A stretch of 64,000 bases of DNA from Tetramitus jugosus (lineage: Eukaryota; Protista; Heterolobosea), in assembly GCA_937625935.1 (NCBI GenBank), contig OW569382.1, positions 124,001-188,000 of the forward strand. Direction: 5' to 3'. Every line of letters starts with the position of its first letter. Position 1 is the stretch's first letter. The position numbers and the translations under genes are program-made. Below, piece after piece: positions 3,813 to 26,721 of this stretch. The notes under the pieces were generated by a model. That model was not told where the DNA came from. It ran no database searches and worked only from the letters and a program-made list of their open reading frames with translations.

Positions 3813-3933
3813 AAGCCTACATTACTGAGGGTTCTCGAGTAGTCTCCTATCTCAATACTAACTCAGCCAGATGGTGCTTAACTTCTCTATTCGAAATGGG
3901 AAGAGGTGGTTCCACCATTGTATGAACGTAGAC
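3813..3933 (-). rRNA. 5S rRNA, copy 1
   Basis: Minus strand reads GTCTACGTTCATAC...GAAGTTAAGC (box A)...GTTAGTA...GGAGAC...GTAGGC-TTTT; 119-nt core, terminal helix GTCTAC/GTAGGC, oligo-T Pol III terminator. Confidence 0.95.
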
Positions 3934-3982
3934 ATTAGATTCAATTCGTAATTGTTTTTGGCGCCGAAGGCGGACGAAGTGG
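3934..3982 (-). promoter_or_regulatory. conserved 5S upstream flank / apparent retroelement target block
   Basis: Colinear with 25017-25051 plus 25566-25588 upstream of the second 5S copy; contains GGCGCCGAAGGCGGACGAAGTGG. Confidence 0.6.
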
Positions 3983-4115: not shown

Positions 4116-4218
4116 TAGTCATTTCTCCTTGCGGAGAATTGATGACTTGATGAACGGATGATTGACGAACGGGACACTTGACCTACGAACTGCACAGACC
4201 ACGACTTGAACAGTCGCT

Positions 4219-4225
4219 TATAAAA
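4219..4225 (+). promoter_or_regulatory. TATA box of the cofilin gene
   Basis: TATAAAA about 100 bp upstream of ATG 4321. Confidence 0.5.
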
Positions 4226-4320
4226 GGCCAGATAATATGTGCCAGAGCTTAGTACAAACCAACAACTCACACAAAGACGAGAACACCACAAGTAACTAAC
4301 TAGCCCTATAACTTCTCAAG

Positions 4321-4752
4321 ATGACTCAAACTGGAATTCCAACCCATGACACTGCTATTACCACATTCAGAGACTGCTTCCTCAAGGGTGAACATAAATA
4401 TGTTACATTCCTTATTAAGGATGGCTCTATTCAAGTGGAGCGAACTGGTTCTTCTCTAGAGGAGTTGGTCCAAGGTTTACCAAGCAATGAATGTAGATAT
4501 GCCGTCTATAGAGCCAACTACACTGTCCCTTCTGAAATTCAAGGAATAGCTGACAGTCAAAGAAGCAAGAGTGTAATGATACTGTGGGCTCCTTCGACTG
4601 CCAACGTTAGAAACAAATTTGTCTACTCTGCTACTCGAATTCCATTTGGAAATCGCCTCGGCTTCTCTGGGCTAAGTGTCCAAACCAGCGATGTCAACCA
4701 GCTCTCTGAAGAAGAGATCTTGGGCAAATGCAAGGCATTTTTCAAGCATTGA
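4321..4752 (+). CDS. ADF/cofilin family actin-depolymerising factor
   Basis: LPSNECRYAVY, KSVMILWAPSTANVRNKFVYSAT, 143 aa. Confidence 0.9.
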   Translation: MTQTGIPTHDTAITTFRDCFLKGEHKYVTFLIKDGSIQVERTGSSLEELVQGLPSNECRYAVYRANYTVPSEIQGIADSQRSKSVMILWAPSTANVRNKFVYSATRIPFGNRLGFSGLSVQTSDVNQLSEEEILGKCKAFFKH

Positions 4753-5269
4753 TCTCACTCAGGTGAAGTGGACTCCTTCCTCAATCATGTACATATCATT
4801 TCGATCAAATCCATGGTAAAACCTCCGTGGATGTCCAATGGCATCAATGTTGCTTTGAACAAAGTAAAGACCATTTCAACTCATTTCTTTATCTCTTCTT
4901 TCACATGATTATGAACAAATTTGCAATTTATTATGACAATATTTATTCTGCTTTTTCAATGGTAGCAACAACATACTACTCCTCCATTTTTGTTGGCCAC
5001 AACATTCATCAATGTGTTGAGGAGAAAACATTACATCATTCCAGCCCTTCTGAACTGTCATGATAATCAACTTCGTCAAAAGGAGTTTGATAAACACCTC
5101 CTTAATGTTCGAAATTGTGACAGACAGAACATTCATTACGGTCTTGATTCACATTAGAGAAACTTCGATCGAGAAGACTACACAGAAACACACTGAAGTC
5201 AGAACTGAATAAATTAAATTGTATTTCTTTGAAATTGCCAAGTTGAAATTTGTTTCAATCAAAACTGTG

Positions 5270-24895: not shown

Positions 24896-25016
24896 AAGCC
24901 TACATTACTGAGGGTTCTCGAGTAGTCTCCTATCTCAATACTAACTCAGCCAGATGGTGCTTAACTTCTCTATTCGAAATGGGAAGAGGTGGTTCCACCA
25001 TTGTATGAACGTAGAC
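24896..25016 (-). rRNA. 5S rRNA, copy 2 (identical to copy 1)
   Basis: 119-nt core identical to 3815-3933, followed by a TTTT terminator. Confidence 0.95.
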
Positions 25017-25051
25017 ACCAGATACAATTTGTAACTGTTTTTGGTGCTGAA

Positions 25052-25565
25052 CCTGATACACTTTGGATCCTCCACTGGGTTGTCAGATGTCAGTACGCAA
25101 TTGATGCCCGAAGAAGACTTGTCCTGGAAGTCTACAACAAGTTGCTCAAACTTCCATTACCTGATCGAGAGTCCGCCATCTCCCTATGGTTTGACAAAGT
25201 GCGTTCAGAAACCGATTCATGTGACCCATGCCGAGGAAGTCGAGCAGAGAGTACCTCATGGGAATGATGGGATTAGAGAACGACGCTGTCGACCAGGTGG
25301 CGGATGAGCTGATGAAAAATGGGATGAACCAAGAAGTAGCGCAGCGAAAGGCCAGTAGTTTTGTGTGCTTGGTGAAGAGTCGCTCCATCACAACGCTGCA
25401 CAGACTCTACCAGCAATCAAAGGACTGCAAACAGTAGTAACGCTCTGCGAACATTACTAACAAGAAAGATGAGACGCTAGCGGAGTGTAACAAGGACAAT
25501 TTGGGAAACTAAAAGAAAGTAGGACAGAGTAGTAAAGAGCAACCGCGTGTTGTATTAAAAAAAAA
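25052..25565 (+). mobile_element. 5'-truncated non-LTR retrotransposon fragment A with A-tail, inserted 27-35 bp upstream of 5S
   Basis: 514-bp interruption of the conserved 5S flank; encodes EPDTL..LHWVVRC knuckle half and a frameshifted ORF end (stop 25437), then a 3' UTR and A9 (25557-25565); flanked by GGTGCTGAA / GGCGCCGAA. Confidence 0.7.
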
Positions 25566-25588
25566 GGCGCCGAAGGCGGACGAAGTGG

Positions 25589-26023
25589 GCAGAAGATTGT
25601 TCTTCAGAACTGGGACTCCTCCACACGGAAGAAGTAGTCCGAGGCCTGTACAACACCAGTGCTGCGCCCACAATGTGTATCTGGTGCAATAAAGAACCTG
25701 AAAGAGTTTTACACTGCCTTGCGCTTCCCAAGGTGTGTATGCTGGAAAGTGTCTAGCATTGACAGTCAGCAAGGCGATGATCATCATGGGTGTGTCCTCC
25801 GACAGTTGGATCAACCAGATCTGGTCCGATGAAGGACTAAAGAATGGCAAAACGGAAAAGCGCCCATTGTGGTGGACAAGTAGCGACTCCCTGAAGAGTA
25901 TGATGGGCATGGCCAATGGGGTCAAAGCGGCCGAAAGCAAGAACTGTCCAAGGGGAAACGGACATATCTCACGACTCTCCTTTGAAGGACCACGAAAGCA
26001 TCACTGTTTGTGCTATTTGTTTA
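25589..26023 (+). mobile_element. degenerate non-LTR retrotransposon fragment B (divergent relative of A), joined at position -49 of the 5S flank
   Basis: LHTEEVVRGLYNTSAAPTMCIWCNKEPERVLHCL CCHC-type knuckle; later frameshifted segments align with fragment A (LKSMMGMAN vs LMGMMGLEN; GRKQELSKGK vs GMNQEVAQRK). Confidence 0.62.
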
Positions 26024-26226
26024 ATTGTTTTTGCTCACTTTATTATACAGATAGAACGAAATATGGGGAAAGCGAGAAGCTATCATGCTCGGGAGAAGGG
26101 AAAACAAAAAATTCCGGGAGCAGCATTGACGTTCTTTGTAAACGTGAACAAAACTAAATATAAAAATCCTTGACAAGCAAAACAACATCACACTCCAACG
26201 AGCAAACAAACATCTACTAACACACA

Positions 26227-26721
26227 ATGGATATTTTCGAGAAAGTAGTTCGTCACGGAATTTTCTCTTGTGCGTTCAGTGCTCTTGGAGCAGGTATAAT
26301 GGCCTGGAAACGAAAAACTGCTCCAAAGGAATCTATCTCTCGTGATCTATCATCAACGCTTCGCTGGTTTGCTGTTGATTGCAATAGCCTCAAGATTAAA
26401 GATTGTGTAGAGGGTATCATTGCAGTAAGAAATGACTTTGCGCATAAGTGGGACCTTGATGTTAATGAACTCAAGCTCTCCAACATATTGAATGATATTC
26501 TTTGGTTGTTGGAGGAATGCCACAAACGTCATCCAGTACAATCTCAAATAGATGATTTGAACACATTAATTAAACACTTTGAAGAGCACAGAGAGGAGTT
26601 GAGCAAGAAGAGAATGAAGATACTTGATAACTTTGGACCGATAGAGGACGAGTGTGATTTAGAGATCTTTAATGATATGGTTCTTTACTCCGTGTACGGT
26701 ACTGATGATCCATTTGAGTGA
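26227..26721 (+). CDS. standalone Swt1-like HEPN-domain protein (putative RNase)
   Basis: DLSSTLRW...IIAVRNDFAH Rx4H motif in a helical protein; ATG after A/C-rich leader, AATAAA downstream. Confidence 0.7.
   Translation: MDIFEKVVRHGIFSCAFSALGAGIMAWKRKTAPKESISRDLSSTLRWFAVDCNSLKIKDCVEGIIAVRNDFAHKWDLDVNELKLSNILNDILWLLEECHKRHPVQSQIDDLNTLIKHFEEHREELSKKRMKILDNFGPIEDECDLEIFNDMVLYSVYGTDDPFE

What the first reader, a model, noticed from the sequence alone, without database searches (positions are those of the whole stretch)
24896..26023. Non-LTR retrotransposon family apparently targeting the upstream flank of dispersed 5S rRNA genes
Seen: the 49 bp upstream of 5S copy 1 (3934-3982) recur upstream of copy 2 but split by a 514-bp insert (25052-25565). 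The insert has an ORF end, a 3' UTR and an A9 tail. A second, diverged homologous fragment starts exactly where the shared flank ends (25589). Both point away from the 5S gene, head-to-head, and both encode the end of a CCHC knuckle plus a common C-terminal domain (RRLVLEV..LWFD / KCLALTV..IWSD; LMGMMGLEN / LKSMMGMAN). Established: L1-like ORF2 proteins end in such a knuckle, insertions are often 5'-truncated with A-tails, and Dictyostelium TRE5 elements insert about 50 bp upstream of Pol III genes in this orientation. Inference: a Pol III/5S-directed safe-haven targeting system in a gene-dense protist, with repeated independent insertions at one locus.
Basis: partly seen in the sequence, partly recalled or inferred. 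Interest (0 to 1): 0.9.

Follow-up and report, generated by a model that had tools for sequence, protein, structure and literature searches.

The report
LINE insertions stacked upstream of 5S gene
Two dead fragments of jumping genes (LINE retrotransposons) sit head-to-head in front of one 5S rRNA gene; they belong to a large family that lands about 30-50 bases upstream of tRNA and 5S genes, the habit known from Dictyostelium TRE5, here in a protist that groups with heterolobosean amoebae.

Summary
Two identical 5S genes lie on the minus strand. The upstream flank of copy 1 recurs at copy 2, split by a 514-523 bp poly(A) insert (fragment A). Fragment A is the last 128 codons plus 3' UTR of a LINE ORF2. 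Fragment B (25604-25982) is an older, more decayed ORF2 end of a sister subfamily. Both point away from the 5S gene.

Full-length relatives elsewhere in the genome encode an ORF1 with two RRM-like domains. Their ORF2 carries endonuclease, reverse transcriptase and a CCHC motif. They have 13-17 bp target-site duplications and long poly(A) tails.

Of 28 distinct loci sampled by the 3' end of fragment A, 20 abut a tRNA gene and 1 a 5S gene, always head-to-head, 29-71 bp upstream (most 34-48). By coordinates, at least 10-12 of 76 listed 5S genes carry such an insertion. The family therefore targets RNA polymerase III genes in general, mainly tRNA genes, not 5S specifically.

Recognition of the Pol III initiation complex is inferred, not shown.

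A single-gene myosin tree places the host with Acrasis (Heterolobosea), apart from Amoebozoa. I found no paper describing this.

This scan had already reported the same family on at least eight other pieces of this genome. New here are the clean empty/filled 5S comparison and the 5S statistics.

The parts
24897..25016 (-). 5S rRNA gene copy 2, the targeted Pol III gene
   Evidence: Rfam RF00001 at 100.4 bits, full length. Identical to copy 1.
25017..25042 (.). Proximal upstream flank of the 5S gene (-1 to -26), shared with copy 1
   Evidence: Aligns with 3934-3959 at 21/26.
25043..25051 (+). Ambiguous 9-bp junction: left copy of a target-site duplication, or 5' microhomology between cDNA and target
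   Evidence: 8/9 identical to the element consensus and 7/9 to the target sequence 3960-3968.
25052..25565 (+). LINE fragment A, 5'-truncated and dead. ORF2 C-terminus runs to 25434 with a frameshift near 25201-25204. Stops at 25435-25440, 3' UTR 25441-25556, A9 tail 25557-25565.
   Evidence: 85-87% amino-acid identity to residues 1153-1280 of the full-length ORF2 in L031. 84-91% DNA identity to at least 10 other copies.
25566..25588 (.). Distal part of the shared 5S flank (-27 to -49 of the empty site). Its first 9 bp are the right copy of the possible target-site duplication.
   Evidence: 23/23 identical to 3960-3982; the only two occurrences in the window.
25589..25603 (.). 15 unassigned bases between the shared flank and fragment B
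   Evidence: No match to copy 1 or to B-type copies.
25604..25982 (+). LINE fragment B, an older 5'-truncated ORF2 C-terminus of a sister subfamily, with frameshifts and a stop. No recognisable poly(A) or target-site duplication is left.
   Evidence: 69-79% DNA identity to at least 30 copies. 61-75% amino-acid identity to the B-type ORF in L039 and 43% to L031 ORF2 residues 1129-1164.
3814..3933 (-). 5S rRNA gene copy 1, the unoccupied comparison locus
   Evidence: Rfam at 100.4 bits. No LINE homology anywhere nearby.
3934..3982 (.). Intact 49-bp upstream flank of copy 1, serving as the empty site
   Evidence: Alignment A1. The flank is conserved in a subset of 5S loci.

Best explanation
The locus records two separate target-primed reverse-transcription events by members of one large superfamily of endonuclease-type LINEs.

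Fragment B landed first, about 50-65 bp upstream of the 5S gene. Fragment A landed later, between B and the gene, at -27 to -35. Both have their 5' ends facing the gene. Both are 5'-truncated and now dead.

The superfamily as a whole integrates in a window about 30-50 bp upstream of genes transcribed by RNA polymerase III, always head-to-head. tRNA genes are the main targets and dispersed 5S genes are also used. New copies pile up next to the gene and push older ones outward.

Shown here: element identity, structure, hallmarks of recent retrotransposition, position and orientation bias, and the lack of a common target sequence.

Inferred by analogy with Dictyostelium TRE5-A: the pre-integration complex docks on the Pol III initiation complex (TFIIIB placed by TFIIIC, or TFIIIA at 5S genes). 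The element's RRM-containing ORF1 protein or its ORF2 C-terminal domain would be the likely adaptor.
For: - Empty versus filled site inside one window.
- Fragment A equals the ORF2 end of the full-length element in L031, which has ORF1 of 377 aa and ORF2 of 1280 aa with Exo_endo_phos and RVT_1 domains.
- Perfect 13-17 bp target-site duplications and poly(A) tails of up to 24 A at five elements. The duplicated sequences are unrelated to each other and lie between about -27 and -48 of the tRNA gene.
- Of 28 distinct loci sampled by A's 3' end, 20 abut a tRNA gene and 1 a 5S gene. All 21 are head-to-head, with homology starting 29-71 bp from the gene (most 34-48). Three loci have no Pol III gene and four were not extended.
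- Genome coordinates give further 5S genes with a LINE 5' side within about 40-90 bp, head-to-head, on C9, C10, C11 (two), C23, C36, C2, C46 and C31. About 0.02 such cases are expected by chance for 127 hits.
- The only LINE pieces in the 64-kb window lie in the 0.9 kb upstream of 5S copy 2.
- A is 9-16% diverged from its ten nearest relatives and B 21-31%. This fits the younger element lying nearer the gene. Same-orientation stacks occur in L030, L039 and L040.
- Many intact ORF2 frames of 1280-1318 aa at 42-50% identity show a diverse and probably active superfamily.
- TRE5-A lands 35-42 bp upstream of the 5S gene and about 48 bp upstream of tRNA genes, 5' end facing the gene (PMC5391098).
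Against: - No protein contact with TFIIIB or TFIIIC was tested; the docking step is analogy only.
- At least two copies (L033, L035) lie at no recognisable Pol III gene.
- 5S copy 1, and the 5S gene in L041, have no insertion.
- No LINE hit lies near either of the two U6 genes.
- No empty allele of this particular site was seen in reads. Contigs of groundwater metagenomes carry the filled form.
- The 9-bp junction of fragment A is ambiguous.
Confidence: 0.85

Rival explanations
1. The position is read from a component other than TFIIIB. Candidates are a Pol III subunit (as Ty1 integrase reads AC40), TFIIIC itself, or the nucleosome-free, bent DNA upstream of active Pol III genes. The outcome is the same but the adaptor differs.
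For: Nothing here distinguishes the docking partner. Yeast Ty1 reaches a similar region through a Pol III subunit (PMC7459421, listed).
Against: The narrow window and strict orientation at both tRNA and 5S genes match the TFIIIB footprint used by TRE5-A and Ty3. TRE5-A shows a shorter distance at 5S genes (PMC5391098). The same shift may exist here, but that rests on few measured junctions.
Confidence: 0.25
2. Insertion is random, and only copies that happen to fall next to Pol III genes survive purifying selection in a gene-dense genome.
For: The genome is compact: single-exon genes lie a few hundred bases apart in the window. Off-target copies exist (L033, L035).
Against: Selection cannot produce a fixed distance of about 30-50 bp or a 21/21 orientation bias. 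Young copies with perfect duplications and long tails already sit at these positions. Other intergenic DNA in the window holds no copy.
Confidence: 0.04
3. The endonuclease recognises a specific DNA sequence that happens to lie upstream of these genes, as in R1, R2, Tx1 or Dada elements.
For: A subset of 5S genes shares a conserved 49-bp upstream flank that could serve as a sequence target.
Against: The duplicated target sequences at six insertions share no motif. Targets include at least eleven tRNA isotypes with unrelated flanks, and 5S genes lacking the conserved flank on C9, C11 and C36.
Confidence: 0.03
4. The 5S-LINE association arose by duplication or co-mobilisation of a 5S gene together with an adjacent LINE, not by repeated targeting.
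For: The 5S unit with its 49-bp flank is itself dispersed and ends sharply at -49.
Against: The empty copy 1 shows that the flank was interrupted, not co-duplicated. Flank homology ends at different positions in different 5S loci. Different subfamilies and truncation points occur at different 5S genes. Target-site duplications flank the LINE alone.
Confidence: 0.02

Closest known systems
TRE5-A (and TRE5-B/C) of Dictyostelium discoideum and other dictyostelids
   Same: - Endonuclease-type LINE with two overlapping ORFs and a cysteine-histidine motif after the reverse transcriptase.
- Oligo(A) tail, variable target-site duplications and frequent 5' truncation.
- Integrates about 40-50 bp upstream of tRNA genes with its 5' end facing the gene, and also hits the 5S gene at a somewhat shorter distance (PMC5391098, PMC3159450, PMC5006619).
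   Different: - The host groups with Acrasis (Heterolobosea), not with Amoebozoa, in a myosin tree.
- No Dictyostelium protein is among the 52 nearest ORF2 homologues, all at 32% identity or less.
- The 5S targets here are dispersed chromosomal genes, not copies on an extrachromosomal rDNA element.
- Many deeply diverged subfamilies (42-50% ORF2 identity) share the habit.
- Phylogenetic independence from TRE5 was not tested.
NLTR-B of Polysphondylium (Heterostelium) pallidum
   Same: [quoted passage not shown]
   Different: NLTR-B carries an RNase H domain downstream of the reverse transcriptase. No RNase H domain was found here. NLTR-B has only three known copies in a dictyostelid.
Ty3 and Ty1 LTR retrotransposons of Saccharomyces cerevisiae; DGLT-A of Dictyostelium
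   Same: They use Pol III genes as safe havens by contact with the transcription machinery, and integrate upstream of tRNA genes (PMC5911963, PMC6101501, PMC7459421, listed).
   Different: These are LTR elements that integrate through an integrase, not by target-primed reverse transcription. They lack the strict head-to-head rule.
Sequence-specific LINEs inside or next to small RNA genes (Dada, R1/R2, Tx1; named from my own knowledge)
   Same: LINE families confined to multicopy RNA genes.
   Different: Those recognise a DNA sequence and insert within it. Here the duplicated target sequences are unrelated and only the distance to the gene is constant.

Membership tests
Endonuclease-type non-LTR retrotransposon (LINE) | Reverse transcriptase domain | tested here: met
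   RVT_1 at E 7e-29 in the ORF2 of L031 and L041. The window fragments lie downstream of it but are 85-87% identical to that ORF2's last 128 residues.
Endonuclease-type non-LTR retrotransposon (LINE) | N-terminal apurinic-type endonuclease | tested here: met
   Exo_endo_phos over residues 10-227. L041 scores 25.2 bits, above the 24.5 cut-off. L031 scores 22.1 bits, just below it.
Endonuclease-type non-LTR retrotransposon (LINE) | Poly(A) tail, target-site duplication, 5' truncation, no terminal repeats | tested here: met
   A9 tail on fragment A. Tails of 10-24 A and perfect 13-17 bp duplications at L030, L031, L036, L039 and L041. Many truncated copies.
TRE5-like Pol III-upstream-targeting LINEs (by behaviour) | Insertion window about 30-50 bp upstream of tRNA genes | tested here: met
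   In 15 measured loci the element starts 29-48 bp from the tRNA 5' end, with one at 71 bp.
TRE5-like Pol III-upstream-targeting LINEs (by behaviour) | Fixed orientation, element 5' end facing the gene's 5' end | tested here: met
   20 of 20 tRNA loci and the 5S locus. All coordinate-matched 5S and tRNA cases with a LINE upstream show the same orientation.
TRE5-like Pol III-upstream-targeting LINEs (by behaviour) | 5S genes also targeted, at a slightly shorter distance | tested here: inconclusive
   5S targeting is met: at least 10-12 of 76 listed 5S genes. Fragment A sits at -27 to -35. Flank homology in other 5S loci ends at -31 to -46, but only three of those ends were tied to a LINE, so the distance shift is not established.
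TRE5-like Pol III-upstream-targeting LINEs (by behaviour) | Dependence on TFIIIC/TFIIIB (B box) and ORF1 protein contact with TFIIIB | not testable with these tools
   Needs a trap assay and binding assays.
TRE clade (by descent) | Reverse transcriptase groups with TRE5/TRE3 in a phylogeny | not tested
   No TRE sequence could be obtained through the tools. No Dictyostelium hit appears among the nearest 52 homologues, which is weak evidence against close kinship.
L1-like LINEs | ORF1 plus ORF2 with endonuclease, reverse transcriptase and C-terminal CCHC; no RNase H | tested here: inconclusive
   The architecture fits and a CX2CX8HX4C motif is present. zf-RVT scores only E 0.12. The nearest Atlas clusters carry RVT_1, Exo_endo_phos and zf-RVT. 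No clade phylogeny was done. PDB hits to R2 and human L1 ORF2 protein are both weak.
Sequence-specific LINEs (R1/R2/Tx1/Dada type) | A common recognition sequence at the insertion site | tested here: not met
   Six duplicated target sequences share no motif.

The most novel reading that the evidence does not exclude
Pol III-complex-directed integration evolved independently in a LINE superfamily of Heterolobosea (Discoba). It reproduces the TRE5 geometry, including use of 5S genes, in a different eukaryotic supergroup. The sharp -49 boundary of the dispersed 5S unit would then hint that these elements also shape how 5S genes spread.
Probability: 0.5. Interest if true: 0.75.

Novelty: new member of a known kind. 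Interest (0 to 1): 0.6.

Why it matters
Safe-haven targeting of Pol III genes by LINEs has been described only in dictyostelid amoebae. A second, apparently unrelated lineage with the same distance and orientation rule would make the Pol III initiation complex a recurrent docking platform for target-primed reverse transcription.

It would also offer a natural comparison for how a LINE protein reads that complex. This genome adds something Dictyostelium lacks: well over a hundred candidate dispersed chromosomal 5S genes (139 first-look candidates in the 5S-plus-flank DNA search; 76 distinct genes listed), some occupied and some empty. Type 1 and type 2 Pol III promoters can therefore be compared as targets within one genome.

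Tried and rejected
The 5S statistics therefore rest on coordinates only.
- Exact look-up of a window protein to name the genome: nothing on record.
- A homologue search with SAC3 gave three unnamed hits. The full-length myosin search timed out.
- Reads: only contigs were available. They bridge both junctions of the filled site, including in two groundwater metagenomes, but show no empty allele and cannot show absence.
- Rfam at permissive thresholds found no RNA gene next to the copies in L033, L035 and L040.
- AlphaFold model of the ORF2 C-terminal 230 residues: mean pLDDT 59, too poor for a fold search.
- RNAalifold on the conserved 3' end gave a 5-bp hairpin without covariation.
- A scan of JGI metagenome contigs with an ORF2 alignment found no relatives.
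- Upstream of 5S copy 1, I suspected a further element at 4154-4810. It is a cofilin-like cellular gene family.
- Neither of the two U6 genes has a LINE hit nearby in the partial lists.
- Paper searches for Heterolobosea or Naegleria with non-LTR elements and tRNA genes found nothing relevant.

Full report
**What is in the window.** Rfam finds two 5S rRNA genes, both on the minus strand, at 3814-3933 and 24897-25016. Each scores 100.4 bits and they are identical over 120 bases. ARAGORN finds no tRNA gene in the window.

The 49 bases upstream of copy 1 (3934-3982) recur at copy 2 in two pieces. Bases 25017-25051 align with 3934-3968 at 28/35. Bases 25566-25588 are identical to 3960-3982. That 23-mer occurs exactly twice in 64 kb, against none expected by chance. 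Copy 1 therefore serves as an empty site for what lies between the two pieces at copy 2.

**Fragment A.** The intervening DNA reads on the plus strand as follows:
- an open frame with one frameshift near 25201-25204;
- a double stop at 25435-25440;
- a 116-bp untranslated tail;
- A9 at 25557-25565.

A DNA search of the window's own genome (26.35 Mb, 56 contigs) finds at least 45 related stretches. Ten are near full-length matches at 84-91% identity. Extending eleven of them gave complete elements. In L031 a 377-aa ORF1 overlaps a 1280-aa ORF2, which carries Exo_endo_phos and RVT_1 domains. Fragment A is 85-87% identical to residues 1153-1280 of that ORF2.

Homology to the element begins at 25043, not 25052. 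The nine bases 25043-25051 match the element consensus 8/9 and the target 7/9. They are either the left copy of a 9-bp target-site duplication or a microhomology junction of the kind common at truncated LINE 5' ends. The insert is therefore 514-523 bp and the target lies at -27 to -35 of the 5S gene.

**Fragment B.** From 25604 to 25982 the plus strand is 69-79% identical to at least 30 other copies. At protein level it is 61-75% identical to a B-type ORF2 end in L039 and 43% identical to L031 ORF2 residues 1129-1164. It has frameshifts and a stop, and no recognisable tail. The 15 bases between the end of the shared flank (25588) and the first detectable homology are unassigned. With fragment A removed, B would begin 50-65 bp upstream of the gene.

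A is 9-16% diverged from its ten nearest full-length relatives and B is 21-31% diverged. The younger element is thus the one nearer the gene. The same outward stacking, always in one orientation, is seen in L030, L039 and L040. A tblastn search with 19 LINE frames finds no other LINE piece anywhere in the 64-kb window.

**Is the position more than chance?** The 30 loci returned for A's 3' end were chosen without regard to Pol III genes. After removing two duplicates, 28 remain. Of these:
- 20 have a tRNA gene at the element's 5' side;
- 1 (this window) has a 5S gene;
- 3 have no recognisable RNA gene, even at permissive Rfam thresholds;
- 4 could not be extended.

All 21 Pol III genes are on the opposite strand, head-to-head. 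Element homology starts 29-48 bp from the tRNA 5' end in 15 measured cases, with one at 71 bp.

Five elements have perfect 13-17 bp target-site duplications and poly(A) tails of 10-24 A. The duplicated sequences lie between about -27 and -48 and share no motif. The position is therefore set by distance to the gene, not by local sequence.

**Are 5S genes real targets?** Sequence could not be fetched for more 5S loci, so I matched coordinates. The inputs were:
- 76 distinct 5S genes;
- 127 hits to the ORF2 C-terminus;
- 39 ORF2 hits;
- the DNA hits.

Ten 5S genes have a LINE whose 5' side lies within about 40-90 bp of the gene's 5' end, on the opposite strand. They are on C39 (this one), C9, C10, C11 (two), C23, C36, C2, C46 and C31. 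Two more, on C16 and C18, fit in orientation at a larger distance.

About 0.02 such cases would be expected by chance for the 127 hits. That figure comes from 76 genes times 120 bp, divided by twice the genome length, times 127.

The few LINEs found downstream of 5S genes are at no fixed distance. By the same matching, about 13 of 53 listed nuclear tRNA genes are occupied. All these lists are capped, so the fractions are lower bounds. They still show that 5S and tRNA genes are used at a similar order of frequency. Both 5S genes with the conserved flank and 5S genes without it are hit.

**The family.** ORF2 searches give 500 first-look candidates. They include many uninterrupted frames of 1280-1318 aa at only 42-50% identity to L031. 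This is a diverse superfamily with the hallmarks of current activity.

ORF1 has no Pfam match. An AlphaFold model (pLDDT 80-90 over residues 20-230) shows two RRM-like domains followed by a long helix and a disordered basic tail. Foldseek returns tandem-RRM proteins.

The nearest public ORF2 homologues are at most 32% identical and none is from Dictyostelium. The nearest Atlas clusters combine RVT_1, Exo_endo_phos and zf-RVT. zf-RVT itself is below threshold here. No RNase H domain is present.

**Host.** The window is eukaryotic, compact and intron-poor. A quick maximum-likelihood tree of a myosin motor domain places the window's protein with Acrasis kona (SH-aLRT 99), apart from two separate amoebozoan clades. 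This is a single gene and one heterolobosean reference, so I take the host as probably heterolobosean. Parts of the locus occur in groundwater and soil metagenomes.

**Reads.** Only contigs were available. One contig of the organism's own runs bridges the 5S/fragment A junction without a mismatch. A 573-bp contig in two groundwater metagenomes bridges A's tail, the 23-bp flank and fragment B, with 12 differences. Both insertions therefore predate that divergence. No empty allele was seen, which contigs could not exclude.

**Mechanism.** Shown: target-primed reverse-transcription hallmarks, the distance window, the orientation rule, the absence of a target motif, and the use of genes with type 1 and type 2 internal promoters.

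Inferred: what those genes share upstream is TFIIIB, placed by TFIIIC. TRE5-A needs a functional B box, its ORF1 protein binds TBP in vitro, and it inserts 35-42 bp upstream of the 5S gene against about 48 bp at tRNA genes, 5' end facing the gene (PMC5391098). Fragment A at -27 to -35, and flank homology ending at -31 to -46 in other 5S loci, are compatible with the same shift but do not establish it.

**Comparison and novelty.** By behaviour this matches TRE5, and NLTR-B, of dictyostelids (PMC5006619). Descent from TRE elements was not tested. Full-text searches found no report of such elements in Heterolobosea.

Earlier reports of this scan describe the same family on at least eight other pieces of this genome and reach the same reading. 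I reached it here from independent loci. What this window adds:
- a clean empty/filled pair at a 5S gene;
- the ambiguous microhomology junction;
- the age-ordered stack;
- a lower-bound estimate of 5S occupancy.

I class it as a new member of a known kind.

Noticed in passing
window 3934-3982; G000 C44:169278-169326 and C46:93087-93132: At least 18 of 40 listed 5S genes share a conserved upstream flank containing a GC-rich palindrome. In three unoccupied loci the homology stops sharply at -49; in others it stops at -31 to -46. It is unexplained why the dispersed 5S unit ends where LINEs tend to insert.
   Followed up: partly
window 4154-4810 (+), ORF 4321-4752: A cofilin/ADF-like 143-aa gene with a TATA-like promoter belongs to a small family with five other copies at 78-89% DNA identity. 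It is a cellular gene, not a transposon.
   Followed up: partly
window 25539-25565; 3' ends in L002-L040: All subfamilies end in a conserved GCAAC, 5-7 bases, GTTGTAT(T), then poly(A). A 5-bp hairpin is possible but shows no covariation. It may be the 3' recognition signal for the reverse transcriptase.
   Followed up: partly
L031:4163-5278:- and relatives: The ORF1 protein has no Pfam match but is predicted to fold as two RRM-like domains plus a long helix and a disordered basic tail. The domain layout resembles DBHS proteins.
   Followed up: partly
L033 (G000 C38:375100-385099) and L035 (C13:167600-177599): Two 5'-truncated copies of about 1 kb lie at no recognisable Pol III gene. These are possible off-target insertions, or they mark unknown Pol III genes.
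   Followed up: partly
window 25558-26097 and 26227-26721: A soil metatranscriptome contig covers fragment B with a 121-bp deletion (25659 joined to 25781). The downstream 164-aa ORF has high RNA-contig depth. Fragment B may now lie in that gene's upstream region.
   Followed up: no
G000 C54 and C56: The two contigs give identical tRNA coordinates (941, 12773, 14364, 14438, 44585). They are probably the same, perhaps organellar, sequence assembled twice.
   Followed up: no
G000 C1:57053/58194, C7:240771/241632, C49:153537/155490: Several 5S genes form divergent pairs 0.7-1.8 kb apart. The space between them could hold back-to-back insertions.
   Followed up: no
G000 C13:146367-146471 and C9:55665-55769: Only two U6 genes were found, and neither has a LINE hit nearby in the partial lists.
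   Followed up: partly
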